A stretch of 64,000 bases of DNA, taken from the NCBI RefSeq assembly GCF_036365525.1, contig NC_090399.1:14879558-14943557 (forward strand), in the 5' to 3' direction. A program made the translations under genes and the position numbers. The notes under the pieces were generated by a model that saw only the letters and a list, made by a program, of their open reading frames with translations, did not search any database and had not been told where the DNA came from. The stretch comes from Heterodontus francisci (Eukaryota). Each line of letters opens with the position of its first letter. The stretch's first letter is position 1. Shown piece by piece: positions 14,376 through 35,897 of this stretch.

Positions 14376-14418
14376 ATGTTCTGGGTTGGATGCGTTTGGT
14401 CATTCCTGTTGTTCTCGA
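14376..14418 (+). CDS. Exon 1 (signal peptide) of NCR3-like gene 1
   Basis: gaACCATG Kozak context, hydrophobic MFWVGCVWSFLLFS, donor A|gtaagt in phase 1, matching the V exon acceptor. Confidence 0.75.
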
Positions 14419-17400
14419 GTAAGTAATTCACATTCATTTTGTACATAATTAAACAGATACACATCCCGCCTCCGCTTCCACACACACATCAACACACACA
14501 CATATGTATATATACCTTCATGTATAGATATGCATATATACAGATACACCTACACACACGAAAATATACATATATATATATAAATCAACTATTGCATTAC
14601 ATACTCTGGAAGACAACGAACAATAACTTGTATTTGTATAGCGCCTTTAACGTATAAAACCTCCCAAGGCGCTTCAAAACCTGTTAACATTAACTGCCTA
14701 AAGAATTGAATTGTGATTCTCGGATAACTGTGATATCGTTAATGGTCCAAACATCGGGGACAGCACATTGAAAGGTTTCCACGAAGCCGCCGCTGCCTGG
14801 GGTGAACCCCATTATAGTTTAGGATTAGACAAGAGTCAAGAGCCACTGATCACAGAATTCAGGCGACTTGAGCGATGCCAATGAAGTGAATTATTTGGGC
14901 TCCTTTCGTAAGTTCGGCTGCCTTCTTCCAGCACATTGGTGTTAGTTTCACACGCTTGGCAGTTTCACCTTGTCTTCGGCCCCATTTATTAGTTCCCCGT
15001 GTGCTCATCAGCCCATGCCAACTGTTTTAGTTATTAATATCAGTCCCTGATGAGTAATGTCAAAGAACAAATATTTAATTGTAGACCGTGGGCATCATCT
15101 GAGCGAACAATAGAAGCTGAATTTTCTAGCTACATGTATTAAGGTTAGTGGCCGAAATATCAGGGGCACCCCCAGGTCCCTCTGTTCCTTTGCCACTAAG
15201 TCATTATCTCTCCCTATCCCTTCTGCCAAAATGCATCACCTCACACCTGTCTGTATTAAATTCCATCTGCCACTTGTCTGCCCATTCTGCTCGCTTATCT
15301 ATGTCCTGTTGCAGGCAGCTCATATCATCCTCACTGCTTGTCATTCCTTCAAATTTGGTGTCATCGGCAAATTTTGAAATTCTGCTCTGTATTCCAGGGT
15401 CCAAGTCATTTATGTATAGAGTATAGGATCCTAGCACTGACCCTTGTGGAACACCACTGTCTACCATCCTCCAGTCTGAAAAACAGCCATTTACCACAAC
15501 CCACTGTTTTCTGTCCTTAAGTCAAATGTTAATCCAATTGCACACTAATCCTCCTATTCCATGAGCCTCAATTTTGTTAGCCAGCCTTTTATGTGGTACT
15601 TTTACCAAATGCTTTCCTAAAAATTATATAGGCAACATCCATCACACTCCCTTCGTCAATCTTCTCAGTTACATCATCAAAAAATTAAATTAGATTCATC
15701 AAGCATGGTCTGCCTTTTACAAATCTGTGCTGCTTATTCTTAAATAACTCAAATTTCTCCTTTTGCTTTTGATATTTCCATTGTTGTTTTCAAAACCTTA
15801 CGCACCACTGGTAAACTCTAGTTAGCCCTTGTTAGTAATCGGATTGAAGCCAGGGAGGAGATGTGTATAAGTGACTAGCCTGGATTATTCCTATCTCTCC
15901 TGGCCACTCTCTTATCCTCCATAATATTTAGCTCATCACAAACTCTGCAGCCCATATCCTATCCGGTACCAAGTTCCCTCATCTATCATAAATACAAGCA
16001 AAATACCGCAGATGCTGGAAATCTGAAATAAAAACAAGAAATGCTGGAAATACTCAGCAGGTCTGGCAGCATCTGTGGAGAGAGAAGCAGAGTTAACGTT
16101 TCAGGTCTGTGACCCTTCTTCAGAACTTGCAGATATTAGAAATGTGAAAGGTTTTAAGCAAGTAAAACAAGGGTGGGGGGAGAGATAACAAAGGAGGAGG
16201 TGTAGATCGGACAAGGTCACAGAGAATAACCGACCACAAGGTCATGGAGCAAAGGCAAGCAATATATTAATGGTGTTTTGAAAGACAAAGCATTAGTATA
16301 GCAGCAAGTACAAACATGAAAAAGCAGTGGGTAGGCAAACTGAACAATCTAAGATAAAATGAAATAAACACCCAAAAAAGAAAAATAACTAAAAATAAAA
16401 GTAAAATGGGGGGCCCGTCATGCGGTGAAATTATTGAACTCAATGTTCAGTCCGGCAGGCTGTAGTGTGCCTCATCGATCACTAACCTGGTTGCTCACTT
16501 ACATTCTTTCCCAGTTTCCCCAATGTCTGAGCCCTAAAATTCTTATTGTTGTGTTTAAAACTATTCATGGCTTCATACATCACTATCTCTGTAGCTTCCT
16601 ACAACCTTACAACACTCTAAGAACTCTGCATTTCCCTGGCTCTGGATGCTGTACGTCCCCCCGCTCCACCCCACTATGCTTGGAATAAACTCTGGAATTC
16701 CTTTCCTAAAACTCTCTGCCTTTCCATCTCTCCCAGCGGCATTAAAAGTCCTCCCCTTTAAGCCCGCTTTTAGTCACCCCCCTCTAGCATCAGTTTATTT
16801 TTAGCTCCAATCCAATTTTGTTTGATTTTGGAAGAGTTATGCGGCCTGTTTGACATTAAAGACACCACGTTACTGCAGATTATTGCTAATTCTATTGTTC
16901 ATATGTAGGAAAGAGCATTTCTTGTTTTTATTTCAGATTTACAGCATCCGCAGTATTTTGCTTTTATTTTAGTAGGGAAGAGCTGCTCGTGTCAATAGTT
17001 TAGGAAAAAGACGTACTCTTCATCTCTGAAAAACGGGGACTGGGGAGGTTAAAGGCAGCGCTTGTTTCTGGGTAAGGCATGACGATAGAAAGTGGATTTA
17101 GCAAAGGACATGTCCTACAGTCAGGAGCTCGGGCTGGCTTTCCAGATGTGGGAATAAATGTAGAAACTATCGTGGAATTCAACAGATGCTGTTACGCAAA
17201 GGACTAGGTCCCAGTGATTCCTTCATCTCTATTTACTTGAGCTTGTATAGTCGCTGAATATTGTTACGGAAGCAAAAGGGAAACACATGGGACAAGTGTG
17301 ATTTCGTTCACGGGCATACAGCAATGTCGCAGGTGAATTTCTCTTATTCGCTGTCACTCTCCAGCGTACCGGATTGTAGTAAGACTCAACTTTAATTAGA

Positions 17401-20400
17401 CCTCACGAATAACTGCATAATTATAGGCAATTTTAAGGATTGAATTGTAAAATGTTCAGTTGCTTTCTATTTCCCTACTTGCGATTTGGTTAACATCCCA
17501 GCCTGCTCCGATTGGAAAAAAAATCGATTATAAAATAGGCCACGGGTAAGGCTTAACATGCAAGGGTGCACTTTTAACTCGCTGTCCCGAGTGTAAAACT
17601 GGAGTCATGTTTGGCTCCCCGTTATAGAAACCGCCCGATTTTCATTAATTTAGATTTTCAACTTATCACCAGTTTACACCCCGGCGCCAACTGAAAACCT
17701 CACCCACTGAACTAATGTAAAAGATAATCGGGAATCAAAGTGTAATATTCATGCTTCTGACGTACTTTAGGCCACAAGGCGGAAATTGGTGAATATTTTA
17801 AGGGAGCTATTTTAATTGTTCTAGAGCAGCCGCCGTTTGAATTATTAAAGACATTACTTATCATTTATATCCATCAATGAAATACCAGTTGCCCATTTTA
17901 TTTGTGGAGCTGTCTGAGGGGGAAAGACAGCAAACTCACATAGACTGGAAATCTGAGTTTTAGGTAGAAAATACTGGATAGACTCAGTAGGTCAGATAAA
18001 TGAAGAGTGTAGGGTTTGTGCGTTCAGGTCTAGGACGCTTCTTCAGAACAGTTATTCAGTATTGACAAATGCTTCCTGACTTGCTGAGCTGTGAATTTAC
18101 TCTTATCCCTAATTCAGGGCAGGACTTTCTGAGGGCAGTTTGCTGGTACCGAAAAAGTAAAAATGTAGAGTGGCGTGACTAACTGATGAGGTTATTTCAT
18201 GTTTGCAGGAGTGACTGCCTCGGGTGTTACAGTCATTCAAGAACCGCGTTCGGTGAGCGTTACCGAGGGTAAAACATTGCATCTATCATGTAGTTTCATT
18301 GTGAACACAGCCCTTTCAGGAAACAACCCCATCGGTTCCCTCATTTGGTACAAAGATTTCAGAACGTCTATAGTTTGTAACAACTGCACGGAATATATCG
18401 GACGAGTTCAGAAAACCGGTTCAAGACCCTTCCGCGAATTTAAAAACGGATCGGTAACAATCACCGGGGTGAAACTGAACGATACAGGAAGGTATTACTG
18501 CGAGGTGGTTCTTAACATCGGTGGAAAGGGCACCGGAGAAGGCACAGAAGTCACAGTAAACCGTAAGTTTGTATTATCTTACATCTTATGCCTTTAGATT
18601 CAGTTCCCCCCTCCAAAAAAAAAAGATATTTTTATTGGAAACTCGGGGTACTGTCACCTTTAAGACATAAATTGAAATTTAACCCGGTTGGGTCTTTTCC
18701 GCAGAATAGGTAAACTGGCGGGTTCGGATGCACCGCTGGTATTACACTCTGTCCGATTTTACTCCATTGAAAATAGCAGAGAGCAGTTTGGGGCCAGGTG
18801 TAAAACCGGCGTTCATACAAAATATTTACAGCACAGAAGGAGGCCATTCGGCCCGTCGTGTCTGTGCCAGCTCTCTGCAAGAACAACTCAGCTAGTCCCA
18901 CTCACCCGCTCTTTCCCCCTAGTCCTGCATTTTCTTTCTCTTTAGGTGCATATCCAATTCACCTTTGAAAGTTCCGACTGCATCTCCCTCCACAACACTC
19001 TCACACACTGCATTCCAGATCCTAACCACATGCTAGTAAAACAGTTTTTCTCCCCCTCTCATGTCATTGTTGGTTCTTGTGCCAATCCCTTTAACTTGGT
19101 GTCCTCTGGTTCACAACCCGTCAGCTAATGGGACCAGTTTCTCTCTATCTACTCATTCTAGATTCCTCATGATTTTTAAACACTTCTATTAAATCTCTCA
19201 ACCTTCTCTTCTCTAAGGAGAACAACGCAGTCATCTCCAATCTATCCATGTAACTGAAGTCCTTCATACCGGAATATATTTTTGTAAATCTTTTTTGCAG
19301 CCTTTCTAAAGCCTTCACATCCTTCCTAAAGTGCAGTGTGCAGAATTGGGCCTGATACTCCAGCTGAGGCCGAGCCTGTATTGTGTAAAGTTTCACCATA
19401 ACTTCCTTGCTTTTGTACCCTATGCCTCTATTTATAAAGTCCAGGATCCTGTTTGCCTTTTTAACTGCTTTCTCAACCTGCCCTGCCATCTTCAATAATT
19501 TGTGCACATATACCCCCAGGTCTCTCTGTTCAAAGAACAAAGAACAAAGAAAATTACAGCACAGGAACAGGCCCTTCGGCCCTCCAAGCCTGCGCCGATC
19601 CAGATCCTCTATCTAAACCTGTCGCCTATTTTCTAAGGGGCTGTATCTCTTTGCTTCCTGCCCATTCATGTATCTGTCTAGATACATCTTAAAAGACGCT
19701 ATCGTGCCCGCGTCTACCACCTCCGCTGGCAACGTGTTCCAGGCACCCACCACCCTCTGCGTAAAGAACTTTCCACGCATATCCCCCCTAAACTTTTCCC
19801 CTCTCACTTTGAACTCGTGACCCCTAGTAATTGAATCCCCCACTCTGGGAAAAAGCTTCTTGCTATCCACCCTGTCTATACCTCTCATGATTTTGTACAC
19901 CTCAATCAGGTCCCCCCTCAACCTCCGTCTTTCTAATGAAAATAATCCTAATCTACTCAATGTCTCTTCATAGCTAGCGCCCTCCATACCAGGCAACATC
20001 CTGGTGAACCTCCTCTGCACCCTCTCCAAAGCATCCACATCCTTTTGGTAATGTGGCGACCAGAACTGCACGCAGTATTCCAAATGTGGCTGAACCAAAG
20101 TCTTATACAACTGTAACATGACCTGCCAACTCTTGTACTCAATACCCCGTCCGATGAAGGAAAGCATGCCGTATGCCTTCTTGACCACTCTATTGACCTG
20201 CATTGCCACCTTCAGGGAACAATGGACCTGAACACCCAAATCTCTCTGTTCATCAATTTTCCCCAGGACTTTTCCACTTACTGTATAGTTCACTCTTGAA
20301 TTGGATCTTCCAAAATGCATCACCTCGCATTTGCCCTGATTCAACTCCATCTGCCATTTCTCTGCCCAACTCTCCAATCTATCTATATTCTGCTGTATTC

Positions 20401-23400
20401 TCTGACAGTCCCCTTCACTATCTGCTACTCCATCAATCTTAGTGTCGTCTGCAAACTTGCTGATCAGACCACCTATATTTTCCTCCAAATCATTTATGTA
20501 TATCACAAAAAACAGTGGTCCCAGCACGGATCCCTGTGGAACACCACTGGTCACATGTCTCCATTTTGAGAAACTCCCTTCCACTACTACTCTCTGTCTC
20601 CTGTTGCTCAGCCAGTTCTTTATCCATCTAGCTAGTCCACCCTGGACCCCATGCGACTTCACTTTCTCCACCAGCCTACCATGGGGAACCTTATCAAACG
20701 CCTTACTGAAGTCCCCTTTAGAATTTTAACCTTTATTTCACATTGCCTCTCCATGTTCTTCCTACCAAAATGTATCAGTTCACACTTCTCTGCATTAAAT
20801 TTCATCTGCCACTGTTCGTCCATTCCACAACCTGTTTATATCCTGTAGAAGTCTATCACTATCCTCCTCACTGTTCACAATACTTCCAAGTTTTGTGTCA
20901 TCTGTGAACTTTGAAATTGTGCCTTGTACACCCAAGTCTAGGTGATTAATGTATATCAGGAAAAGCAGGGGTCCTAGTACCGACACCACTGTACACCTTC
21001 CTGCTGTCCAAAAAGCAATCGTTCGTTCATCACTCCTCTCTGTTTCCTGTCACCCAACCAACTTCGTATCCATGCTGCCACTTTCCTTTTTATTCCACAA
21101 CTTAAACTTTGCTGGCAAGTCTATTATGTGACACTTTATTAAATGCCTTTTGGAAGTCCATATACATCACAATACCCTCATCGGCCTACTTTGTTACCTC
21201 ATCAAAAAACTCAATCAAATTAGTTAAATGTGATTTGACTAGCATTCCTTAATTAATCCACATTTGTCCAAGTGACTGTTAATGTTGGTCCAAATTATTG
21301 TTTCTAAAGGATTTTTCATTGCCGAGGTTAAACTAACTGGACTGTAGTTGTTGGGTTTATCCTTACACCCTTTTTTGAACAATAGTGTAACATTTTCACT
21401 TATCCAGTCCTCTGGCACAACCCCCCTTTCGCAGGGCAATTGGAAGATTATGGTCAATGCCTCCACAATTTTTACCCTTACTTCCCTCAGCATCCCCAGA
21501 TGGATCCCATCCAGTCCTGGTAACTTATCAACTTTAAGTGCAGCCATCTATCTAATACCTCCCTTTTATCAATTTTTACCCCATACCGCTTCTTAACTAC
21601 CTCCTCTTTCACTATGACTTGGGTAGCATCATCCTGCTTGGTAAAGACAGATGCGAAGTACTCAGCCATGCCCTCTACCTCCATGTGTAGATCCTCCTTT
21701 CGGTACTTAATTGGCCCCACCTCTCCTCTTACTACCCTTATGCTATTTGTAGGGTTATAGACTTATGGATTCCAGAGGACTGGAGGACAACGAATGTGGT
21801 ACCATTATTCAAGAAGGGTAGCAGGGATAAACTAGGTAATTACAGGCTGGTGAATCTAATATCAGTGGTTGGGAAGCTATTGGAAAAAATCCTGAGGGAC
21901 AAGATTAATCTCCACTTGGAGAGGCAGGGATTAATTAAGAATAGTCAGAATGGCTTTGTTGGGGGAGATCTTGTCCAACAAACTTGATTGAATTTTTCGA
22001 GGAGGTGAATAGATATGTAGATGAGGGTAAAGCAGTTGATGTAGTCTATATGGACTTCAGCAAAGTTTTTGATAAGGTCCCACATGGGAGATTGGCTAAG
22101 AAGGTAAGAGCCCATGGGATCCAGGGCAATTTGGCAAATTAGATCCAAAATTGGTTTATTGACAGGAGACAGAAGGTGATGGACGAGGGTTGTTTTTGCA
22201 ATTGGAAGCCTGTGACCAGTGGTGTACTGTAGGGTTCGGTGCTGGGATCTTTGCTGTTTGTAGTGTACATTAATGATTTAGACGTGAATATAGGAGGTAT
22301 GATTAGTAAGTTCGCAGATGACACGAAAATTGGCGGTGTCGTAAATAGTGAGGAGGAAAGCCTTAAATTACAGGACGATATAGATGGGCTGGTAAGATGG
22401 GTAAAGTAGTGGCAAATGGAATTTAATCCTGAGAAGTGTGAGGTGATGCATTTTGGGAGGACTAACAAGGCAAGGGAATATACAATTGATGGTAGGACAC
22501 TAGGAAGTACAGAGGGTCAGAGGGACCTTGATGTACTTGTCCATAGATCACTGAAGGCAGCAGCAAAGGCAGATAAGGTGGTTAGGAAGGCATATGGAAT
22601 ACTTGCCTTTATTAGCTGAGGCATAGAATATAAGAGCAGGGAGGTTATGATGGAGCTGTATAAAATGCTAGTTAGGCCACAGCTGGAGTACTGTGTACAG
22701 TTCTGGTCACTACATTATAGGAAGGATGTGATTGCACTGGATAAGGTGCAGAAGAGTTTCACCAGGACGTTGCCTGGGCAGGAGCATTTCAGCTTTGAAG
22801 AGACACTGGATAGGCTCGGGTTGATTTCCTTGGAGCTGAGAAGGCTGAGGGGGGACCTGATTAGAGATATACAAAATTATGAGGGGCATAGATAGGGTAG
22901 ATAGGAAGAAACTTTCTCACTTAGTGGAGGTATCAATAATCAGGGGACATAGATTTAAGGTAAGGGGCAGGAGGTTTTGAGGAATTTAGAGGGGATTTGA
23001 GGAAAAAGTTTTTTACCCAGAGAATGTTTGGAATCTAGAACACTGCCTGAAGAGGTAGGGAGGCAGGAACCCTCACAACATTTAAGAAGTATATCGATGA
23101 GCACTTGAAACACCATAGCATACAAGGCTATGGATCAAGTGCTGGAAAATGGGAATAGAGTAGATAGGTGCTTGATGGTCAGCACAGACACGATGGCCAA
23201 AGGGCCTGTTTCTGTGCTGTATAACGCTATGGCTCTAACATTTAAGAAGTATTTAGACGAGCACTTGAAACGCCATGACATAGAAGGCTAAGTGCTGGAA
23301 AATGGGATTTGAATAAATAGGCTTGGTGGCTGGTGCAGACACAGTGGGCCAATGGGCCCCTTTCTGTGCTGTATAACTCTATGACTCTATGATTCCCTTT

Positions 23401-26400
23401 TATGTTAGTCTCTTCTCATAGTCTCTCTTTGCCTCTCTTATTCACGTTTTAACTTCCCTTCTCAACTTTTTATATTTAGCTTGGTCCTCACTTATGTTGT
23501 CAACCTGACATCTGTCATACATCCCCATTTTCTGCTGCATCTTACTCTCTATCTCTATCGTCATCCAGGGATCCTGGTTTGTTTACCCTACATTAACCCC
23601 TTGTGGGAATGTACCTTATCTCTTCCCAAATTATCTTCTCTTCAAAGGCAGCACATTGTTCCATTACAGTTTTACCTGTCAATCTTTGATTTCTATTTAC
23701 CTGGAACAGATTTGTTCTGACCCCACTGAAATTGGCCATCCTCCAATTTAATATTTTTTACTTTAGATTGCTGCTTGAAGAAGAGGGGAAAAGTGGCAGT
23801 GATAGGGGATTCATTAGTTAGGGGAACAGGCAGGTGTTTCTGTGGCCTTAGACATGACTCCAGGATGGTGTGTTGCCTCCCTGGTGCCATGGTCATGGAT
23901 ATCACAGAGAGGCTGCAGGACATTCTCCTGGGGAAAGGTTAGCAGCCAGAGTTTGTGGTCAACTTTGGTACCAATGACATAGGTAAGAAGGGGGATGAGG
24001 TTCTGAAAGCAGATTTTATGGAGCTAGGAAGGAGATTAAAACGTAAGACCTCAAAAGCAGTAATCTCAGGATTACTCGTAGTCCCACGTGCAAGTGAGCA
24101 CAGGAATAGGACAATTGAGTGATTGGACATGTGGCTGGAGAACTGGTGTAGGAGGGAGGGCATCAGATTTCTGAGACATTGGGACCAGTTCTGGGGCAGG
24201 TGGGACCTGTATAAGATGGATAGGTTACATCTTAGAAGGACTGGACTATTATCCTCGCGGTGAGATTTGCTCGTGCTTTGGGGGAAGATTTAAACTAGAT
24301 TGGCAGTGTGATGGGAAACTGAGAGGGAGCTCAGATTGGAGAGACCGAAGAAGGGTCACTGACCCGAAACGTTAACTCTGCTTCTGTTTTCACAGATGCT
24401 GCCAGACCTGCTGAATGGTTCCAGCATTTCTTCTTTTTATTTCAGATTTCCAGCATCCGCTGTATTTTGCTTTTATTATTATATCAGAGAGAAACACAAC
24501 TGGTAACTTGTCAGGGGTGTGGGAACAAGGAGCAAATATTGCAGAAGAATACCAAGGAGCACGGAATACTGAGAGAGAGAGATAGCATTAGAGTAGGGAA
24601 TAGTAAGTTATTAGGTGGGGTTAGAGTAAGAGAGAAATTAATATAGTCTAAATCAGGGTTCATGTGAATGCAGAGTGTGGTTAATAAGATTGGTGAGGTA
24701 CAGGTGCAGATTGCCATGTGGAAATATGATAATGTGGCTATGACAGAGACCTGGCTCAAAGAAGGGCAGGACTTATATTAAATATTACTGGATACAGGGT
24801 GTTCAGGAAAGATAAAAAAGGGAAAAAAAGGGTAGGGGTGGCAGTATTGATTAAAGAGGCATTACAGTGCTGGGGAAAAATGATGTGCCAAAGGGGTTGA
24901 GGACAGAATCAATCTGGCTAGAGCTAAGGAACAAAAAAGGTGCGATTACATTGCTCAGAGTTGTCTATAGACTACCAGCTAGTGGGAAGGACGTGGAGGA
25001 ATGAATTTGCAAGGAAATTACAGAGAGGTGCAAAAATTCTAGGGTAGTTATAATGGGGGACTTTAATTATCCAAACATAGACTGGGATAATAGCAGTGTA
25101 AAGGGCAATGAGGTGCAAGAGTTCCTGGAGTGTGTTCAAGAAGATTTTCTACAACAGTATGTTTCTCATCCAATGAGAAAGGAGGCACTGCCAGACCTGG
25201 TTCTCAGGAATGAGGTGGGCCAAGTAGATCAAGTATCAGTAGGAGAGCATTTAGAGGACAGTGATCATTGTATCATAAGGTTTAAGCTGACAATGGAAAA
25301 GGACAAAGAGCAATTCAGGGTAAGAATAATTAACTGGGGGAAAGCCAACTTCAATGGGGTAAGAATGAAGCTGGGGCGAATAAGTTGGAGTCAAAAGCTG
25401 GGAGGAAAACCAGTAGATGAACAATGGGCTACCTTCAAAGAAGAGATAGTCGAGCACAGTCAAGGTATGCTCCCTTGAAGGGAAAAGGTAGGGCAAACAA
25501 ATCCAGAGCTCCCTGGATGACAAAAGAGTTAGATTAAGATAAAGAAAAAGTGTGCTTGTGACAGATGTCAGGTGGAAAATACTATTGAGAACCAGGCTGA
25601 AAATAGAAGGTCAAAAGAGGAAGTAAAAAAGTAATTATGAAGCAAAGAGAGAGCATGAAAAGAGACTTGCAGCTAACATTAAATGGAATCCCAAAGTTTT
25701 CTATAGACATATAAATTGTAAAGGGTGGTAAAAGGAGGAATGGGACTGATTAGGTACCATAAAGGGGATTTATACATGGAGGCAGAGGGCATAGCTGAGG
25801 TATTAATTGAATACTTTGCATCTTTCTTTACCAAGGAAGAAGATGCAACACAAGCTATGGTGAAATAGGAGGTAATTCAGACACTAGAAGGGTTTAAAAT
25901 TGATAGAGTATAGGGCGGCACAGTGGCGCAGTGGTTAGCACCGCAGCCTCACAGCTCCAGGGACCCGGGTTCGATTCTGGGTACTGCCTGTGCGGAGTTT
26001 GCAAGTTCTCCCTGTGTCTGCGTGGGTTTTCTCCGGGTGCTCCGGTTTCCTCTCACATCCAAAGACTTGCAGGTGATAGGTAAATTGGCTGTTATAAATT
26101 GCCCCTAGTGTAGGTAGGTGGTAGGGAATATGGGATTACTGTGGGGTTAGTATAAATGGGTGGTTGTTGGTCGGCACAGACTCGGTGGGCCGAAGGGCCT
26201 GTTTCAGTGCTGTATCTCTAAATAAATAAATAATAGGCTGTCTGTACTGAAATTGGATAAAAAACCAGGACCAGATGAGATGCATCCAAGGATACAGAGG
26301 AAAATGAGGTTGGAAATCGCAGAGGCACTGGCCATAAATTTTCAGTCTTCCTTAGACTCGGGATGGTGCCAGAGGACTGGAGAATTGCAAATGTCACACC

Positions 26401-29400
26401 TTTGTTCAAAAAAGGGTGTAAAGATAAACCCAACAACTACAGGCAGTTGGTTTAACTTCAGTGATGGGGAAACAACTAGAAACAATAATTCAGGACAAAA
26501 TTAATAGTCACATGGACAAATGCGAGTTAATTAAGGAAAGCCAGCATGGATTTCTTAAGGCAAAATCGTTTTTAACTATCTTGCTGGAGTTTTTTGAAGA
26601 GGTAACAGAGAGAGTTGATGAGGGCGATGCTGTTGATGTGGTGTACATGGACTTTCAAAAGGCATTTGATGCAGTGCCACACAACAGGCTTGTGAGCAAG
26701 GTTATAGCTCATGGAATAAAAGGGACAATAGCAACATGGGTATGGAATTGGCTGAGTGACAAGAAACAGAGAGTAGTGGTTAATGGATGTTTTTTGGGCT
26801 GGAGGAATGTTTGGAGTGGAGTTCCCCAGGGGTCAGTGTCAGGACCTTCTCTTCCTGATATATATTAATGACCTAAACCTTGGTGTACAGGGCACAATTT
26901 CAAAGTTTGCAGATGACACAAAACTTGGAAGCATTGTGAACTGTGAGGAAGATAATGTGGAACTCCAAAAGGACATAGACAAGTTGGTGGAACGGGCAGA
27001 AAGGTGGCAGATGAAGGTCAATGCACAGAAATGTGAAGTGGCTCATTTTGGTAGGAAGAAAATGGAGAGACAATATAGAATAAAGGGTACAATTCTAAAG
27101 GGGGTGCAGGAGCAAAAAAACGTTAACTCTATTTTTCTTCCCACACATGCTGCCTGACCTGCTGAGTACTTCCAGCACTTTCTGTTTTTGTTTCTGATTT
27201 CCAGCATCCACAGTATTTTGCTTTTGTGTTGTTGTAGTAATCCAAGAGTCTGCCCTATGATAGTAAGACTATGAATTCAAATCCCATCACAGCAACCAAG
27301 GAATTTAAATGAATGTGAAAACAGAAAGCTCGTATTGGTATTGGTGACCGTGTAACTATCAGATTGGTACAAAATCCATCTGGTTTGTTCATGTGCTTGA
27401 AGGAAGGAAATTGCTATTCTTTCCTGATCTTCACCTATTGCAATGTACTTGACTCTTTACTGCCCTCTGCAATGGCCGAACAAACAATTCAGTTGTCAAG
27501 AAGGCAGCTCGCTACCATCTTTTCAAGGGCAATTAGGGATGGGCAGTAAATACTGGTCTTGCCAGCGACGTTCTCATCGTGAATTAATTGACAAAAAACC
27601 GAACGCTTCATTGACCTTTAAATCTCAATAATATACACTACATATCCTCCATTTAATAAAATACTCAACTAGAATAAACCAATTTTACAAACAGTTTACC
27701 CACTACAACACTTATAACCAGTTACTGTGCTGAAAAAGATATGGATATACGTCGCCACTGAAGTAAGTGATCGTCAGATGCACATTAGGTTCGACAAATA
27801 CACCCAACGACTACGACGTGAGGATGAAATGCGTGGCAAGTATACAAAATCCATTTCTTAAATAACCGTCATATCAAAAAACAAGTGACAGAAAAATAAA
27901 TTTGAGTTGATGATCCCTTCTTCATTATTGTGTTGTCACATGACTGTGTTTGGCAACACAGGTCACTGCACACCCAGTACTCCAGGAATATAAATTCGTC
28001 TGCTCCGAATAGGAGAGGATTGCTGATTCAGGTCATTTGCGATTCTGCACGTCTGATCTCACGATCCTGTCTGGGCAGACTAGGGAAACAAAGTACTGAA
28101 ACAGACTTTCCTCTGCCGTTGAAACACAGCGTGGGAGCAAGGACACATTTATTTAGTAATGAAACTGGACACCTCCCTCCCATGCTAATATTTGGGAAAT
28201 TCACCGTTTGCTGGGTATGCAGACAGAATTCGTGGTATCTTCAGATGTGTTGCAATAAGTACACTAATAAAAATCCGGGCTCCACCTAACCGAAAAGAAA
28301 TAACTTGTTGAGCTTTTTTCTGAGAAATAGATCGGCATAGAAGATAGTGCAACACTTCACCTCCCTACACCCCCCGCCACGCTCCGTCCCCCACCCAGCT
28401 CCGAACCCTGCTGAAATTTGCAGGTTTTTGAAGTACAAGTTTGTATTCACCTAACCATCGCTTTCTTGTGGTTTTATCTGCTCAAGATCTTGCTGCTGTG
28501 CTGCGCCTTGAGCGTTAAGTCAACTGCGGTTTCTTGACGGAAGGCTACAGCTAGCAATAGCAACCTTCAAAAACTCAAAGGGAGATGGAAACAAAAAACA
28601 ACAACAGCTTTTGATTTATCTCCTCAGGTCATGACGATTCTGAAGTGACATCTCCACCGAATCAAGGGAACATATATCTGCTTATATTTTCAGTGTTGGT
28701 GCTTGTGCTGCTGGGTCTCATCCTTGTTAAAATAATTTCAACCCTGCTCTGCTGTGGCCCTCGAGGTAATTATCCTGAATTCAACTTCGTTACTACATGG
28801 AAAGAGTTACTGCAAGCATATTCCTTTCTTGCAAAGTTTGTATGATTATACACATAAAAGAATAACACGGCTGATGTGTAGCTTACGTTGCAATGTAGCG
28901 ACACTCAAATAGTCAAAATGATTGATGAATAGGAATAATCAGGGTTTTTCATGATTATTTGTATTTACCAAAAGGCACGGAATGACGTGATTTCAATAAT
29001 TTGGAAAACGTGTAATCTTGCATAATTCGAAACCATAAACGCCATGGCTTTTGACATACACATATTTTAATTGGCGCAAAAGCAGTTAATCGGAAGACCC
29101 CCATGTGTGTTAAATGGAACAGTAGCGCAGTATGCACTAGTGTGAGGTGATGCATTTTGGGTGGACTAACAAGGCAAGGGAATTTACAATGGGTGGTGGG
29201 ACACGAGGAAGTACAGAGGCCCAGAGGGACCTTGGTGTTCTTGTTCATAGATCACTGAAGGCAGCAGCACAGGCAGATAAGGTGGTTAGGAAGGCATATG
29301 GGATACTTGCCTTTATTAGCCGAAGCATAGAAAATAAGAGCAGGGAGGTTATGATGGAGCTGTATAAAAGGCTAGTTAGGCCACAGCTGGAGTACTGTGT

Positions 29401-32400
29401 ACAGTTCTGGGCACCACACTATAGGAAGGATGCGATTGCACTGGAGAGGGTGCAGAGGAGATTCACCAGGATGTTGCCTGGGCTGGAGCATTTCAGCTAT
29501 GAAGAGAGACTGGAAAGCCTAGGGTTGTTTTCCTTAGAGCAGAGAAGGCTGAGGGGGGTGGGGGGGGGGCCTGATTGAGGTATACAAAATTATGAGGGGC
29601 ACAGATAGGATAGATAGGAAGAAACTTTTTCCCTTAGCGGAGGGATCAATAACCAGGGGACATAGATGTAAGGTAAAGGACAGGAGGTCTAGAGGGGATT
29701 TGACGGAAAAAAATTTCACCCAGAGGGTGGTTGGAATCTGGAACACACTGCCTGAAAGGGTGGTAGAGGCAGGAACCCTGCTTTAAGAAGTATTTAAATG
29801 TGCACTTGAAATGCCATAGCATGCAAGGCTACGGGCCAAGTGCTGGAAAATGGGATTAGAATAGATAGGTGTTTGATGGCCGGCACAGACACAATGGGCC
29901 GAAGAGCCTGTTTCTGTGCTGTATAACTCTAAGCCTCTATGACTGTCTGATGAAAGCTGCCATCGGATGCACCAGAGAATGAGGGAGACTGAGCTTCAAC
30001 TCCCCCACAGCCTTATTTTCCTATTAGAGGCCGATCATCACTGGCATGCCCTTTGCAAGCCAGGTTGTGTGGCATTGGCAATGAAGAAAGGGATTTGGGG
30101 AAGCTTCGGGAGCAGTGAAGTGGTCTGACTGAGGAACCTGGTCAAGTGAGAAGCATGAATAAGAAAAAGCTTGCATTTATATAGCGCCTTTGAGATAGTA
30201 AAAACACCCCAATGTGCTTCACAGGAGCGTTACCAAAAAAAATTTGACACCAAACCACGTAAGCAGGTTTTAGGGCAGCTGGCCAAAAACTGAGTTAAAG
30301 AGGGAGGTTTCAAGGAGGAAAGAGAGGTGAAAAGACATAGAGGGTGAAAAGAGAAGGAAAAAGTGGAATAAATTACAATAGCAAGCCGTGAATCACAACA
30401 AGAAGAATGAAAAATCATCACTGTGGTGTATATTTACGCACCACTTTCAATTAAATGTATTGTTTTTATTCCGTAAAATTATAAGTCATCCAAATAGTAG
30501 AAGATCAAAAACTTATTTGAACACTCAACTTAGAAAATGCCAGAATATGCCATGATTTCACAGCAGTTTTAAATATTTCGCTGCAGAGGCCATTTAATAG
30601 TTATGTATTTTAATGTTTTTGTCACATTGCAAGATATTAGATGTTTCAGTAAGAACAGAGAAGATGGTAAAAGGGGGGGGGGGCGGTGTGGCATTGTTAA
30701 TCAAGGAGAGTATTACAGCGACAGAAAGGACATTTGAGGACTCGTCTACTGAGGCAGTATGGGCCGAGGTGAGAAACAGGAGAGGAGAGGTCACCCTGTT
30801 GGGAGTCTTTTATAGACCTCCGAATAGTTCCAGAGATGTAGAGGAAAGGATAGCGAAGATGATTCTCGACAGGGGCCAGAGTAACAGGGTAGTTGTTATG
30901 GGGAACTTTAACTTTCCAAATATTGACTGGAAATACTATAGTTTGAGTACTTTAGATGGGTCAGTTTTTGTCCAGTGTGTGCAGGAGGGTTTTCTGACAC
31001 AGTATGTAGACAGGCCAACCAGGGGCGATGCCACATTGGATTTGGTACTGGGTAATGAACCCGGCCAGGTGTTAGATTTAGATGTAGGTGAGCACTTTGG
31101 TGATAGTGATCACAATTCGGTTAGGTTTACCTTAGCGATGGGCAGGGACAGGTATATACCGCAGGGCAAGAATTATAGCTGGGGGAAAGGAAATTATGAT
31201 GCGATTAGGCAAGATTTAGGATGCGTAGGATGGGGAAGGAAACTGCAGGGGATGGGCACAATCGAAATGTGGAGCTTATTCAAGGAGCAGCTACTGCGTG
31301 TCCTTGATAAGTATGTACCTGTCAGGCAGGGAGGAAGTTGTCGAGCGAGGGAGCCGTGGTTTACTAAAGAAGTTGAAGCGCTTGTCAAGAGGAAGAAGAA
31401 GGCTTATGTTAGGATGAGACGTGAAGGCTCAGTTAGGGCGCTTGAGAGTTACAAGCTAGCCAGGAAGGATCTAAAGGGAGAGCTAAGAAGAGCAAGGAGA
31501 GGACACGAGAAGTCATTGGCGGATAGGATCAAGGAAAACCCTAAGGCTTTCTATAGGTATATCAGGAATAAAAGAATGACTAGAGTTAGATTAGGGCCAA
31601 TCAAGGATAGTAGTGGGAAGTTGTGTGTGGAATCAGAGGAGATAGGGGAAGCGTTAAATGAATATTTTGCGTCAGTATTTACAGTAGAGAAAGAAAATGT
31701 TGTCGAGCAGAATACTGAGATTCAGGCTACTAGGCTAGATGAGATTGAGGTTCACAAGGAGGAGGTGTTAGCAATATTGGAAAGTGTGAAAATAGATAAG
31801 TCCCCTGGGCCAGATGGGATTTATCCTAGGATTCTCCGGGAAGCAAGGGAGGAGATTGCAGAGCCTCTGTCCTTGATCTTTATGTCATCATTGTCGACAG
31901 GAATAGTGCCGGAAGACTGGAGGATAGCAAATGTTGTCCCCTTGTTCAAGAAGGGGAGTAGAGACAGCCCTGGTAATTATAGACCTGTGAGCCTTACTTC
32001 GGTTGTGGGTAAAATGTTGGAAAAGGTTATAAGAGACAGGATTTATAATCATCTAGGGAAGAATAAGTTCATTAGTGATAGTCAGCACGGTTTTGTGAAG
32101 AGTAGGTCGTGCCTCACAAACCTTATTGAGTTTTTCGAGAAGGTGACCAAACAGGTGGATGAGGGTAAAGCAGTGGATGTGGTCTATATGGATTTCAGTA
32201 AGGCGTTTGATAAGGTTCCCCACGGTAGGCTATTGCAGAAAATATGGAAGTATGGGGTTGAAGGTGATTTCGAGCTTTGGATCAGAAATTGGCTAGCTGA
32301 AAGAAGACAGAGGGTGGTGATTGATGGCAAATGTTCATCCTGGAGTTTAGTTACTAGTGGTGTACCGCAAGGATCTGTTTTGGGGCCACTGCTGTTTGTC

Positions 32401-35400
32401 ATTTTTTATAAATGACCTGGAAGAGGGTGTAGAAGGGTGGGTTAGTAAATTTGCAGATGACACTAAGGTCGGTGGAGTTGTGGATAGTGCCGAAGGATGT
32501 TGTAGGGTACAGAGGGACATAGATAGGATGCAGAGCTGGGCTGAGAGATGGCAAATGGAGTTTAATGCGGAAAAGTGTGAGGTGATTCACTTTGGAAGGA
32601 GTAACAGGAATGCAGAGTACTGGGCTAATGGGAAGATTCTTGGTAGTGTAGATGAACAGAGAGATCTTGGTGTCCAGGTACATAAATCCCTGAAGGTTGC
32701 TACCCAGGTTAATAGGGCTGTTAAGAAGGCATATGGTGTGTTAGCTTTTATTAGTAGGGGGATCAAGTTTCGGAGCCACGAGGTCATGCTGCAGCTGTAC
32801 AAAACTCTGGTGAGACCGCACCTGGAGTATTGCGTGCAGTTCTGGTCACCGCATTATAGGAAGGATGTGGAAGCTTTGGAAAGGGTGCAGAGGAGATTTA
32901 CTAGGATGTTGCCTGGTATGGAGGGAAGGTCTTACGAGGAAAGGCTGAGGAACTTGAGGTTGTTTTCGTTGGAGAGGAGGAGGAGAGGTGACTTAATAGA
33001 GACATATAAGATAATCAGAGGGTTAGATAGGGTGGATAGTGAGAGTCTTTTTCCTCGGATGGTGATGGCAAACACGAGGGGACATAGCTTTAAGTTGATG
33101 GGTGATAGATATAGGACAGATGTCAGAGGTAGTTTCTTTACTCAGAGAGTAGTAGGGGCGTGGAACGCCCTGCCTGCAGCAGTAGTAGACTCGCCAACTT
33201 TAAGGGCATTTAAGTGGTCATTGGATAGACATATGGATGAAAATGGGATCGTGTAGGTCAGATGGTTTCACAGGTCGGCGCAACATCGAGGGCCGAAGGG
33301 CCTGTACTGCGCTGTAATATTCTAATTCTAATATTAAACAATGATAAAGTACGGATAATATAATTTGGAAAGTATAAGTTTCTGTTAATAAAGAAGCATA
33401 TTTCCATCTCAAAGTTTTCATATTGTATTGACAGTAGTACCATACTATTTTGGATTGTTGTTTTTGTTCTGGTTTTTAAAAAATCTAATCGACTTAAAAT
33501 ATTTTATAGATAAAAGAACTGGAACCCAAGTTGTAAGTAAGGTATGTAATATATTGTAACTAAGACATTTAATTTGATTTGCAGTGTGATTCATTGCTGT
33601 TGTCGGTGACCCTTTTTGAGAAAGCTACATAAAGAGATAAGATCCACCTACAGGAAACTTATTATCGTGCAAAAGATTGGAACGTGTCCTGCCAAAATGC
33701 ATCACCTCACACTTCTCAGGATTAAATTCCATTTGCCACTGCTCTGCCCATCTCACCAGCCCATCTATATCATCCTGTAATCTAAGGCTTTCCTCCTTAC
33801 TATTTACAACTCCACCAATTTTCATGTCATCTGCGAACTTACTAATCAGACCTCCTATATTCACGTCTAAATCATTATTGTACACTACAAACAGCAAAGG
33901 TCCCAGCCCCGATCCCTGTGATACACCACTGGTCACAGGCTTCCAATCGCAAAAGCACCCCTCAAAAATCACACTCTACCTCCTGCCACTAAGCCAATTT
34001 TGCATCTAATTTGCCAAATTGCCCTGGATCCCATGGGCTCTTACCTTCTTAACCAATCTCCCATGCGAGACCTTATCAAAAGCCATACTGAAGTCCGTGT
34101 AGACTACATCAACTGCTTTACCCTCATTTACACATCTCGTCACTTCCTTGAAAGATTCAATCAAGTTTGTTGGACATGATCTCCCCCTGATAAAGCCATG
34201 CTGACTATTCTTAATTAATCCCTGCCTCTCCAATTGGAGATTAATCTTGTCCCTCAGAATTTTTTCCAATAGTTTCCCTACCACTGATGTTAGACTCACC
34301 GACTTGTAATTACCTGGTTTATCCCTGCTACCCTTCTACCACATTCACTATCTTCCAGTCTTCTGGAACCTTTCCTGTGGCCAGAGAGGATTTGCAAATT
34401 TGTGTTAGAGCCACTGCAATCTCTTCCCTTGCCTCACATAACAGCCTGGAATACATCTCATCTAGGCCTGGGGATTTATCCACTTTTAAGCCTGCTAAAA
34501 TCGCTAATACCTCCTCCCTTCCAATGCTAATTTGTTCGAGTATATCACAATCCTCCTCCCTGATCACTACACCTACATCGTCCTTCTCCATAGTGAACAC
34601 AGATGAAAAGTAATCATTTAAAACCTCACCTATGTCCTCCGGCTCAACACAGATTGCCTCTTTGGTCCCTACTCTTTCCCTGGTTATCCTCTTGCCCTTA
34701 ATATACTTATAAAATGCCTTAGGATTTTCCTTTATCTTGCCTACCAGTGTTTTTTCATGTCCTCTCTTCGCTCTCCTAATTACTTTTTTAAGTACCCCCC
34801 TATACTTTCTATACTCCTCTGGGGCCTCTGCTGTTTTCAGCACTCCGAATCTGCTGTAAGCCTCCTTTTTTTTCCTGATCCAATCCTCTATATCCCTTGG
34901 CTTCCAGGGTTCCCTGGACTTGTTGGTCCTACCCCTCACCTTTACGGGAACATGTTGGCTCTGAACTCTCACTTTTTCCTTTCTGAATGACTCCCACTGG
35001 TCTGATGTAGACTTTCCTACAAGTAGCTGCTCCCAGTCCACTTTGGCCAGATCCTGTTTTATCATATTGAAATCGGCCTTCCCCCAATTCAGTACCTTTA
35101 TTTCCGGTCCATCTTTGTCCTTTTACAGAACTACCTTAAATCTTACAGAGTTATGGTCACTATCCCTGAAATGCTCCCCCACTGACACTTCTACCACTTG
35201 TCCAGCCTCATTCCCTAGGATTACATCCAGTAACGCCCCTTTAAGCCTTTTGCACTAAAGCTATCCCAGTTAATATCGGGGAAGTTGAAATCCCCTACTA
35301 TTATTACCCTATTATTTTGACACCTCTCTGAGATTTGCCTACATATCTGCTCCTTTATCTCTCCTTGACTATTTGGAGGCCTGTAGTACACTCCCAGTCA

Positions 35401-35768
35401 AGTGATTGCCCCCTTTTGCATAGTTACTGCACCGAGATGATCAGCTATCCTGTCATTTCAAATCTTGTAACAAATGATCTGATTAATTTAAGGACGGAGA
35501 CAGGTCGGAAACTGTTCCTCATGTCGAGCTGAATATCCCCCGATCAAACCCTCCTCATCGGATTGTGTGCGAGGCAGTGAGGTCCGGCGGACAGAATCAA
35601 AACTCAACAGCAAGTGGCTCGGTATCACTTCCAGCAAGTAATGAAGAATCGGTTGTGTCCACGTCATTGTGGCAACCGGATTATAATGAGGAATCGGTTC
35701 GGTTCGAGCCCGTGCAGGCTCCCAGAAGGATGGAAGGGCAGACCGTGTATGCGGCTGTAAGAGTGTAG
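14376..35768 (+). CDS. NCR3: NKp30/NCR3-like type I Ig-superfamily receptor, 5 coding exons join(14376..14418,18209..18562,28628..28765,33510..33541,35493..35768), 280 aa
   Basis: All introns are GT-AG, and the phases chain 1-1-1-0 into an 843-nt stop-free ORF: MFWVGCVWSFLLFSR-VTASGVTVIQEPRSV...YYCEVVLNIGGKGTGEGTEVTVNR-HDDSEVTSPPNQGNIYLLIFSVLVLVLLGLILVKIISTLLCCGPRD-KRTGTQVVSK-DGDRSE...EGQTVYAAVRV*. The symbol denotes family, not proven orthology. Confidence 0.8.
14455..14585. repeat. (CA)n/(TA)n microsatellite
   Basis: Visible alternating dinucleotide runs just inside intron 1. Confidence 0.8.
15165..15810 (-). mobile_element. Old CR1 RT fragment
   Basis: SGVPQGSVLG...FADDTK...CEVMHFGR. Confidence 0.8.
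15990..16478 (-). mobile_element. Penelope-like element 3' end (family A) with hammerhead motif
   Basis: Minus strand encodes GTLQPAGLNIEFNNF* (GIY-YIG C-terminal TLxPxGLN), followed by a terminal repeat also seen at 16915-16970, 17940-18050, 24345-24480, 27120-27225, 37131-37250. Confidence 0.75.
16091..16127 (-). ncRNA. Minimal type I hammerhead ribozyme motif
   Basis: Minus strand AGTT-CTGAAGA-A-GGGTC-ACA-GACCT-GAAA-CG-TT-AACT: intact core, stems I and II, palindromic helix III (AACGTT). Confidence 0.6.
18209..18562 (+). CDS. NCR3: Exon 2: V-set Ig domain with germline J-like G strand (NKp30-like)
   Basis: Acceptor ttgcag|, donor C|gtaagt, phase 1-1. B-strand Cys (LHLSC), IGSLIWYKD (cf. 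human NKp30 IGSVTWFRD), EYIGRV, DTGRYYC, GKGTGEGTEVTV (cf. GVGTGNGTRLVV). Confidence 0.93.
19531..20714 (-). mobile_element. Young 5'-truncated CR1
   Basis: Open 352-aa RT C-terminal ORF, (tgttctt)n tail as in the element at 1-1770. Confidence 0.93.
21772..23391 (+). mobile_element. 5'-truncated CR1 with duplicated 3' tail
   Basis: RT fragments, 3' UTR present twice (23075-23235, 23237-23391), (ctatgact) tail. Confidence 0.88.
23775..27118 (+). mobile_element. Degenerate CR1 (ORF1 esterase + ORF2) with nested PLE fragment and SINE
   Basis: IGDS/GTNDIG-type ORF1 motifs, MGDFNYP, YMDFQKAFD, FADDTK. Confidence 0.85.
25913..26233 (+). mobile_element. tRNA-derived V-SINE (HE1-like)
   Basis: A box tggcgcagtgg, B box ggttcgattc, V-domain gcggagtttgcaagttctccc...gggtgctccggtttcc, CR1-like tail, (taaa)n. 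Confidence 0.88.
28628..28765 (+). CDS. Exon 3: stalk + transmembrane segment
   Basis: Pyrimidine-rich acceptor atctcctcag|, donor G|gtaatt, 138 nt phase 1-1, encodes IYLLIFSVLVLVLLGLILVKIISTLLCC. Confidence 0.85.
29139..29945 (+). mobile_element. CR1 3' fragment
   Basis: MHFGWTNK...RPQLEYCVQFW, CR1 3' UTR. Confidence 0.88.
30632..33332 (+). mobile_element. Young 5'-truncated CR1 ORF2 (EN+RT), frameshifts at homopolymers
   Basis: 600-aa and 299-aa overlapping ORFs, (ttctaa)n tail, atatta on both flanks. Confidence 0.95.
33510..33541 (+). CDS. Exon 4: 32-nt juxtamembrane micro-exon (D)KRTGTQVVSK
   Basis: attttatag| acceptor and AAG|gtatgt donor. It converts phase 1 to phase 0 as needed to join exon 3 to exon 5, and supplies basic stop-transfer residues. 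Confidence 0.6.
33684..35420 (-). mobile_element. CR1 internal fragment
   Basis: ORF2 linker and RT pieces (KSPGLDEMY, FADD). Confidence 0.88.
35493..35768 (+). CDS. Exon 5: cytoplasmic tail ending in ITSM-type TVYAAV
   Basis: tttaag| acceptor, 91 codons open to TAG, non-repeat sequence, C-terminal TxYxxV, AATAAA ~125 nt downstream. Confidence 0.75.
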   Translation, partial: DGDRSETVPHVELNIPRSNPPHRIVCEAVRSGGQNQNSTASGSVSLPASNEESVVSTSLWQPDYNEESVRFEPVQAPRRMEGQTVYAAVRV

Positions 35769-35891
35769 CGTTTGTATCAAAATGGTCTTTGCATGTTAAT
35801 GGAAGACGTTTTGTAAATTCTAAGCAGGGTTGGAGGCGGATAGCGAGTTTAACAGAAGTTATTTTGATGCTTAACGTCCATTCTAATGATG

Positions 35892-35897
35892 AATAAA
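35892..35897 (+). terminator. Candidate polyadenylation signal of gene 1
   Basis: First AATAAA after the stop codon. Confidence 0.4.

What the first reader, a model, noticed from the sequence alone, without database searches (positions are those of the whole stretch)
14376..35768. NKp30-like receptor with a long signalling tail ending in an ITSM
Seen: phase-compatible exons join an NKp30-type V domain to a ~105-aa cytoplasmic tail ending EGQTVYAAVRV*. Established: mammalian NKp30 has a short tail with no Tyr motifs and signals through CD3zeta/FcRgamma. TxYxxV/I is the ITSM of SLAM-family receptors and PD-1, which binds SAP/EAT-2 or SHP-1/2. Inference: this cartilaginous-fish paralogue signals directly, as an inhibitory or switch receptor.
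Basis: partly seen in the sequence, partly recalled or inferred. Interest (0 to 1): 0.82.

Follow-up and report, generated by a model that had tools for sequence, protein, structure and literature searches.

The report
Horn shark NKp30-family inhibitory-type receptor
This is a real, expressed and already annotated horn shark gene of the known shark NKp30 (NCR3) immune-receptor family; it has lost two of the family's three tail tyrosine motifs, and the one it keeps reads as a "switch" motif because of a single residue, so it is an ordinary family member with a small twist.

Summary
The gene is real. Five GT..AG coding exons (14376-14418, 18209-18562, 28628-28765, 33510-33541, 35493-35768) translate piece by piece into RefSeq XP_067865303.1, [quoted passage not shown] (280 aa), which ends ...EGQTVYAAVRV.

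A 32-nt mini-exon (33510-33541) lies between, and an RNA contig shows the GT..AG joint 33541->35493.

The V domain is NKp30-type:
- Human NKp30 is its best solved-structure match.
- It carries the GTGxGT J-like motif.
- It sits in a 97/91-supported clade of shark and ray NCR3-like proteins, within a broader clade that holds a GenBank nurse shark NCR3.

The long tyrosine-bearing tail is not new. ITIM-tailed NCR3-like proteins are annotated in other sharks, rays, lungfish and newt. Relatives share three conserved tyrosine sites. This gene has His and Ser at the first two and keeps only the last. At that site pY-2 is Thr here, where relatives have I/F/V/A/V, which gives TVYAAV.

It is most likely an inhibitory, possibly attenuated, receptor that recruits SHP phosphatases. 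A SAP-type switch is not excluded and was not tested.

Other agents of this scan described neighbouring NKp30-family genes of this genome before.

Novelty is low: a new member of a known kind.

The parts
14376..14418 (+). Coding exon 1: ATG and signal peptide MFWVGCVWSFLLFS, ends in phase 1, donor gtaagt
   Evidence: Translates to P0001 residues 1-14. The 5'UTR extent is unknown.
18209..18562 (+). Coding exon 2: single VJ-type Ig V domain with the J-like motif GKGTGEGTEVTV, phase 1 to phase 1
   Evidence: P0001 residues 16-132. Pfam V-set E 2.9e-12. Best PDB hit is human NKp30, 3noi, E 7.9e-9. Run X1 holds 100% of its sampled words.
28628..28765 (+). Coding exon 3: short stalk (HDDSEVTSPPNQGN), transmembrane span IYLLIFSVLVLVLLGLILV, then KIISTLLCCGPR. 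Ends in phase 1.
   Evidence: P0001 residues 134-178. Hydropathy maximum at residues 148-166. No charged residue in the outer or central part. K169 lies at or near the cytoplasmic boundary.
33510..33541 (+). Coding exon 4: 32-nt mini-exon encoding (D)KRTGTQVVSK. It converts phase 1 to phase 0.
   Evidence: P0001 residues 179-189. The RNA contig covers it and joins 33541 to 35493. The segment DKxxxTQVVxK is conserved in ray relatives P0015, P0036 and P0073.
35493..35768 (+). Coding exon 5: 91 aa of cytoplasmic tail plus the stop codon
   Evidence: P0001 residues 190-280. X1 contig record 8 matches with 0 differences from 35489/35493 to 35963.
35520..35522 (+). His199 codon (cat) at the family's tyrosine site 1 (TVPHVELNI here; relatives have xxYAxLNI)
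   Evidence: Alignment A1. BLASTP against P0007, which has STIYAKLNI.
35658..35660 (+). Ser245 codon (tcc) at the family's tyrosine site 2 (ESVVSTSL here; relatives have E-x-VVYAxV)
   Evidence: In A1 this column is Tyr in all 10 other sequences ('nearly invariant Y245').
35742..35759 (+). The only retained tyrosine motif, T273-V-Y275-A-A-V278 (acc gtg tat gcg gct gta). It fits the ITSM consensus TxYxx(V/I).
   Evidence: Sequence. Homologous site 3 in relatives reads IVYATV, FVYAAV, VVYGRI, AVYGKI, VVYGAV.
35769..35963 (+). 3'UTR with AATAAA at 35892. The RNA contig ends at 35963.

Best explanation
This is an inhibitory-lineage member of the elasmobranch NCR3 (NKp30) receptor family. It is a type I membrane protein with a signal peptide, one germline-joined VJ-type V domain, a short stalk, a membrane span without a central charged residue, and a 112-aa cytoplasmic tail.

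Shown here: the exon structure, identity to an annotated RefSeq protein, transcription and splicing of the last intron, family placement, and the state of the three family tyrosine sites (His, Ser, Tyr).

Inferred: after ligand binding, a Src-family kinase phosphorylates Tyr275 in TVYAAV. The phosphotyrosine then recruits SH2-domain phosphatases (SHP-2, SHP-1) that dampen activating signals, as for ITIM/ITSM receptors in general. With only one of three motifs left, the signal is probably weaker or differently tuned than in its three-motif paralogues.
For: - Exon pieces equal XP_067865303.1, 'NCR3-like [Heterodontus francisci]'.
- The spliced RNA contig has the joint 33541->35493, with no depth in the unique intron bins. 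The V exon is held by the same run.
- Coverage of the V exon and of the tail exon falls in the same order across the three runs, X1 > X2 > X3.
- NKp30 is the best PDB match for the single V exon and for the family profile.
- The V domain sits in a 97/91 clade with shark and ray NCR3-like proteins, and in a 92/79 clade with nurse shark NCR3 QTT61904.
- Relatives with the same layout carry 1-3 canonical ITIMs at aligned sites.
- The TM has no central Lys. Short-tailed relatives (P0011, P0025, P0052) have Lys in the outer half of the span.
- Motif definitions, and the preference of SHP-2 C-SH2 for Thr at pY-2 and Ala at pY+1, come from PMC12151841.
Against: - No biochemical data exist.
- Two of the three family tyrosines are gone (H199, S245), which could mean the tail is decaying.
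- Tandem-SH2 phosphatases are usually best activated by two phosphotyrosines, and only one is present.
- K169 lies 8-9 residues before the basic stop-transfer point of aligned relatives. It could sit inside the membrane and pair with an adaptor.
- The tissue and cell type of expression are unknown (the runs are coded).
- The link from the V and TM exons to the tail rests on the RefSeq model, contig-length arithmetic and homologue architecture. I saw no junction for that link.
Confidence: 0.6

Rival explanations
1. Switch receptor. The sole TVYAAV motif is a CD150-type ITSM that binds a shark SAP/EAT-2-like adaptor. The receptor would then activate or inhibit depending on whether the adaptor is present.
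For: - TVYAAV fits TxYxx(V/I).
- It has a hydrophobic residue at pY-1. PMC12151841 states this is needed for SH2D1A binding to the CD150 motif.
- A sh2d1a-like transcript is reported in bamboo shark T cells (PMC11372145).
- Among roughly 40 family tails scanned, this is the only TxYxx[VI].
Against: - The Thr sits at a site where relatives have I, F, V, A or V, so it may be neutral drift.
- The closest relative has Ile there.
- The hydrophobic pY-1 and Ala at pY+1 are inherited from the family's ITIM-like consensus and were not newly acquired.
- No orthologue with a conserved Thr was found.
- No binding data exist.
Confidence: 0.12
2. Attenuated or signalling-dead receptor. The tail is under relaxed constraint after losing two ITIM tyrosines. 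The protein would act mainly as a ligand sink or decoy, or be on the way to pseudogenisation.
For: - Site 1 Tyr is His and site 2 Tyr is Ser, while 10 of 10 aligned relatives keep Tyr at site 2.
- The tail is less conserved than the V domain against P0007.
Against: - The reading frame is intact over all five exons.
- The transcript is present and correctly spliced at appreciable depth.
- The last motif and its acidic upstream context (RMEGQ, against KDEQ / NEQ / MEEA in relatives) are kept.
Confidence: 0.2
3. Dual-mode receptor. Lys169 lies within the membrane and couples to a DAP12/FcRgamma-like adaptor in addition to the tyrosine motif.
For: - The hydrophobic stretch runs 30 residues (I148-C177) with K169 inside it.
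- P0007 has Lys at the same place.
Against: - The adaptor-coupling Lys of the short-tailed relatives sits in the outer half of the span (P0011, P0025, P0052), not here.
- A 21-residue span ending just before K169, followed by a Cys-Cys that could be lipid-anchored, is an ordinary arrangement (inference).
Confidence: 0.08

Closest known systems
Shark NCR3 (NKp30) gene family (nurse shark GenBank MT914154-914161; Kinlein et al. 2021, Immunogenetics 73:333) and RefSeq 'NCR3-like' proteins of sharks and rays
   Same: - Single VJ-type V domain encoded in one exon.
- The GTGxGT J-like motif.
- A clade shared with nurse shark NCR3 QTT61904 and with Carcharodon and Hemitrygon NCR3-like proteins.
- The family holds both Lys-in-TM short-tailed forms and long ITIM-tailed forms.
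   Different: This copy keeps only the last of the three tail tyrosine sites and has Thr at pY-2. The 2021 paper was not held in the library, so what it says about tails rests on my memory only.
Human NKp30 / NCR3 (PDB 3noi, 3pv6, 6yjp)
   Same: It is the best solved-structure match of the V domain (E 7.9e-9; profile 81.5 bits). The J-like GTGxGTxxxV segment is shared.
   Different: From established knowledge, human NKp30 has an Arg in its TM, a short tail without tyrosine motifs, and signals through CD3zeta/FcRgamma. This protein has no such charge in the outer TM and has a 112-aa tail with one tyrosine motif. Orthology to tetrapod NCR3 is not resolved by the V-domain tree.
Chiloscyllium plagiosum LOC122541177 (XP_043533738.1, P0007)
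   Same: It is the closest relative found: 53% identity in the V domain and 43% overall. It has the same leader, the VCNNCT motif, the stalk, a TM with Lys at the same place, tail landmarks (LNI-RS, NEESVV, VRF-P) and a C-terminal xVYAxVR(L/V).
   Different: It keeps Tyr at site 1 (TIYAKL), has IVYATV (a canonical ITIM) at the last site, and has 12 extra tail residues.
ITSM-bearing receptors (CD150/SLAM family, PD-1, BTLA)
   Same: The motif fits TxYxx(V/I). It has hydrophobic pY-1 as in the CD150 motif and Ala at pY+1 as in PD-1 (definitions from PMC12151841).
   Different: There is no sequence or domain relationship outside the six-residue motif. PD-1 and BTLA pair the ITSM with an upstream ITIM, which is lost here. 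SLAM receptors carry several ITSMs.

Membership tests
NCR3 / NKp30 family (elasmobranch branch) | One V-set Ig domain with the J-like strand (GxGTxLxV type) encoded in a single exon | tested here: met
   Exon 18209-18562 encodes the whole domain, ending GKGTGEGTEVTVN. Pfam V-set E 2.9e-12.
NCR3 / NKp30 family (elasmobranch branch) | The V domain is closer to NKp30 than to other V families | tested here: met
   Human NKp30 is the top PDB hit of the single exon (E 7.9e-9; next single-V families are SIRPa at 2.4e-6 and light chains at about 1e-5). It is also the top single-domain hit of the family profile (81.5 bits; Vdelta1 66.6, V-NAR 62.7).
NCR3 / NKp30 family (elasmobranch branch) | Groups with recognised shark NCR3 sequences in a tree | tested here: met
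   It sits in a 97/91 clade with Chiloscyllium and ray NCR3-like proteins, and in a 92/79 clade with nurse shark NCR3 QTT61904. The tree holds only the best 93 V domains. No TCR, Ig, CD28 or NITR outgroups were available by reference.
NCR3 / NKp30 family (elasmobranch branch) | Linkage to the MHC | not tested
   Earlier unchecked notes of this scan place MHC class I and II genes 27-52 Mb further along the same 74-Mb piece. I did not verify this.
Mammalian-type activating NKp30 | Charged TM residue for CD3zeta/FcRgamma coupling, and a short tail without tyrosine motifs | tested here: not met
   There is no charge in the outer or central TM, the tail is 112 aa, and it carries TVYAAV. It is therefore not an activating NKp30 in the mammalian sense.
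NCR3 / NKp30 family | Binds a B7H6-type ligand | not testable with these tools
   No ligand data exist.
ITSM (immunoreceptor tyrosine-based switch motif) | Sequence TxYxx(V/I) in a cytoplasmic tail | tested here: met
   T273-V-Y-A-A-V278 lies 105 residues after the TM. The definition is from PMC12151841.
ITSM (immunoreceptor tyrosine-based switch motif) | Thr at pY-2 conserved in relatives | tested here: not met
   The same site reads I, F, V, A and V in P0007, P0036, P0076, P0028 and P0015.
ITSM (immunoreceptor tyrosine-based switch motif) | Binds SAP/EAT-2 and SHP-1/2 in a switchable way | not testable with these tools
   This needs peptide binding or cell assays.

The most novel reading that the evidence does not exclude
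In the horn shark lineage, one NKp30-family inhibitory receptor has been stripped of both ITIMs and retuned by a single Ile/Val-to-Thr change into a lone CD150-type ITSM (hydrophobic pY-1). It would then work as a SAP-dependent activating/inhibitory switch. That would show that SLAM-like switch signalling can arise by a point change inside an ancient NK-receptor family.
Probability: 0.1. Interest if true: 0.55.

Novelty: new member of a known kind. Interest (0 to 1): 0.25.

Why it matters
The result shows how the shark NKp30 family diversifies its signalling. Within one V-domain lineage there are Lys-in-membrane short-tailed (activating-type) forms and long-tailed forms with one to three inhibitory motifs. 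This copy documents stepwise loss of tyrosine sites and a one-residue shift of the last motif from ITIM-like to ITSM consensus. It is a useful data point for the birth-and-death evolution of NK receptors and a cheap, testable peptide for SH2 specificity in cartilaginous fish. It does not change the view of the family, because long tyrosine-bearing tails are already the rule for non-mammalian NCR3-like receptors and the gene is already in RefSeq.

Tried and rejected
- **Direct TM->tail splice (28765->35493).** Rejected. It is out of frame, reads ...AEYPPI...SSK*, and the RNA contig joins 35493 to 33541 instead. An alternative acceptor at 35499/35500 would restore the frame, but it has a purine-rich upstream tract and the RNA contig does not use it.
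- **Word-index protein searches.** The V exon, P0001 and P0007 as queries each returned nothing beyond the query itself. They therefore gave no named nurse shark orthologue. The blank for the V exon in the 65-208 aa range also means no annotated short isoform joins this V domain to the activating-type TM exon at 46048-46250.
- **Literature.** Kinlein et al. 2021 (PMC8273117) and Flajnik et al. 2012 (PMC3709836) are not held. A search for NCR3 + nurse shark + ITIM found no paper.
- **Weak V-like ORF hit at 45324-45536 (minus strand, E 0.008).** The translation shows no Ig hallmarks, so I took it as chance.
- **dN/dS on the tail.** Not attempted. No coding DNA of a relative was available, and divergence (43% identity) would saturate synonymous sites.
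- **Joined model.** I did not build or search a joined spliced sequence. Window exons were handled one by one by reference, and full-length work used the database protein P0001 returned by the search tool.
Full report
**What is in the sequence.** The window holds no N. On the + strand between 14.4 and 36.0 kb lie five coding exons with canonical GT..AG borders:

| Exon | Coordinates | Content |
|---|---|---|
| 1 | 14376-14418 | Signal peptide |
| 2 | 18209-18562 | V domain |
| 3 | 28628-28765 | Stalk and transmembrane span |
| 4 | 33510-33541 | 32-nt mini-exon |
| 5 | 35493-35768 | 91 aa of tail plus stop |

I translated each exon in its own frame, by reference. Every piece is an exact substring of one database protein, and the three split codons give the residues that protein has (R15, R133, D179). 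I did not build or search a joined sequence. Full-length analyses used the database protein itself.

The introns are largely LINE reverse-transcriptase debris on both strands.

**Identity.** A HMMER scan of 1.8 billion representatives with the V exon returned P0001, 280 aa and 100% identical. P0001 is XP_067865303.1, [quoted passage not shown], on a 74.5-Mb chromosome record. The gene, including the tail ending EGQTVYAAVRV, is therefore already in public annotation.

Base 28765 is the first base of a codon, and 35493 starts a codon in the frame that leads to TVYAAV. A direct join shifts the frame and gives RRQVGNCSSCRAEYPPIK...SSK*, with no motif. The mini-exon, which encodes (D)KRTGTQVVSK, restores the frame.

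**RNA evidence.**
- Three coded runs of one sample were found with the V exon. X1 holds all its sampled words, X2 0.44 and X3 none.
- I laid them on 33301-36100, keeping within the 6-kb limit and avoiding the duplicated LINE parts.
- X1 shows one 1291-nt contig (depth 36) whose positions 817-1291 match 35489-35963 without a difference. Its joint 'from 33537 to 35489, skips 1951, GT..AG (cut +4)' corresponds to 33541 joined to 35493.
- The unique intron bins 33395-33488 and 33583-33676 have zero depth, so the material behaves as RNA.
- About 788 nt of the contig lie upstream of the mini-exon. Coding exons 1-3 sum to 535 nt, which leaves about 250 nt for 5'UTR. This is consistent with a full mRNA but is not proof.
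- Coverage of the tail exon falls X1 > X2 > X3, as does coverage of the V exon.
- The junctions upstream of the mini-exon were not seen directly.

**Is the V domain NKp30-type?**
- Pfam calls it V-set.
- Against all PDB sequences the best hits are the four human NKp30 entries (E 7.9e-9 to 2.2e-8). SIRPa follows at 2.4e-6, and single light-chain V domains at about 1e-5.
- A profile of 11 family members again ranks NKp30 as the best single-domain chain (81.5 bits). Only multi-V engineered antibodies score higher, by summing domains.
- The J-like segment GKGTGEGTEVTV carries the GTGxGT signature seen in the human NKp30 alignment and in a subset of relatives.
- In an IQ-TREE analysis of 93 V domains, the gene sits in a 9-row clade (UFBoot 97, SH-aLRT 91) with Chiloscyllium LOC122541177 and ray NCR3-like proteins. 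That clade lies inside an 18-row elasmobranch clade (92/79) holding a GenBank nurse shark NCR3 (QTT61904) and Carcharodon NCR3-like.
- Bichir, lungfish, newt and frog 'NCR3/NCR3-like' proteins lie in neighbouring, unresolved branches. A Polypterus member is even mis-fused to PRRC2A in one record, and PRRC2A is to my knowledge an MHC class III gene.
- The tree has no TCR, Ig, CD28 or NITR outgroups, because none was available by reference.

**The tail in family context.** An alignment of 11 long-tailed relatives (A1) shows three conserved tyrosine sites.

| Site | Family pattern | This gene | Note |
|---|---|---|---|
| 1 | xxYAxLNI | TVPHVELNI (His199, cat) | Tyrosine lost |
| 2 | E-x-VVYAxV | ESVVSTSL (Ser245, tcc) | Tyr in all ten other sequences |
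| 3 | acidic-x-x-VY(A/G)x(V/I) near the C-terminus | QTVYAAV | Tyrosine kept |

At site 3, pY-2 is I, F, V, A and V in the five relatives whose tails reach that far, and T here.

- The closest relative, P0007, has TIYAKL, VVYSAP and IVYATV at the three sites.
- The motif therefore matches TxYxx(V/I), but it derives from the family's last ITIM-like site by a change at a variable position.
- The hydrophobic pY-1 and Ala pY+1 are family traits.
- Of about 40 family tails scanned, this is the only TxYxx[VI].
- ITIM-tailed NCR3-like proteins occur in Carcharodon (P0066), horn shark paralogues (P0076, P0094), rays (P0036, P0015, P0073), lungfish (P0089) and newt (P0030).
- The same V lineage also contains short-tailed forms with Lys in the membrane span (P0011, P0025, P0052).

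**Mechanism.** The layout is that of an inhibitory immunoreceptor: an uncharged outer and central TM, a long tail and a C-terminal tyrosine motif. By analogy with ITIM/ITSM receptors, Tyr275 would be phosphorylated and would bind SHP-2 or SHP-1. PMC12151841 summarises that Thr at pY-2 and Ala at pY+1 favour the SHP-2 C-SH2 domain. It also states that SH2D1A binding to the CD150 motif needs a hydrophobic pY-1, which is present here. A sh2d1a-like transcript exists in bamboo shark T cells (PMC11372145), so a switch function is not excluded. Nothing tested here supports it beyond the six residues.

Loss of two of three tyrosines argues for an attenuated signal. The intact frame and the correctly spliced, reasonably abundant transcript argue against a dead gene.

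**Novelty.** This is an annotated gene in a published family. Nurse shark NCR3 genes MT914154-914161 are cited in PMC12227049. Earlier agents of this scan described neighbouring NKp30-family genes of this genome as known-family members. The small new point is the H199/S245/T273 state of this copy.

The three word-index protein searches found only the queries.

Noticed in passing
window 46048-46250 (+): A terminal exon encodes ...SSLLWQLMVVGVKLAVFVVIIILTISLVHF... plus a short tail and a stop, with Lys in the membrane span. It closely resembles the TM of nurse shark NCR3 QTT61904 (LWQMILTGLKLAVFSVCIIITISLAYF) and of the short-tailed ray NCR3-like proteins. No V exon lies just upstream. The word search found no annotated 65-208 aa protein joining it to the V exon at 18209.
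   Followed up: partly
window 46467-51004: A 24-bp minisatellite (CTGGGTTATTGGGGGTTTTGATCT) runs for about 190 copies at 87% match, directly after the orphan TM exon. It explains the strong GC and AT skew at 46-50 kb.
   Followed up: partly
window 63829-64000 (+): The start of another V exon (KIKVFQTPPSIEASEGETVHLLCTYSTSHGQRIGAFSW...) is cut by the window end. It belongs to the next family gene and matches domain 2 of the Pristiophorus two-V protein P0005.
   Followed up: no
window 30613-33256 (+) and 33625-35391 (-): Large LINE ORF2 remnants (endonuclease and reverse transcriptase) fill introns 3 and 4. The + copy has a 600-aa ORF and a 299-aa ORF separated by a frame break. RNA contigs of these repeats reach word depths in the tens of thousands.
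   Followed up: no
window 28733-28756 (residues K169 to C177): A Lys followed by IISTLLCC lies inside a 30-residue hydrophobic stretch. The Chiloscyllium relative shares the Lys. It may be a snorkelling boundary Lys with a lipid-anchored Cys pair, or a buried charge.
   Followed up: partly
P0013 cluster (Polypterus senegalus): One GenBank record (KAG2469052.1, 'PRC2A protein, partial') fuses an NCR3-like two-V protein with PRRC2A. This hints that the bichir NCR3-like genes lie beside this gene, which is to my knowledge in the MHC class III region.
   Followed up: no
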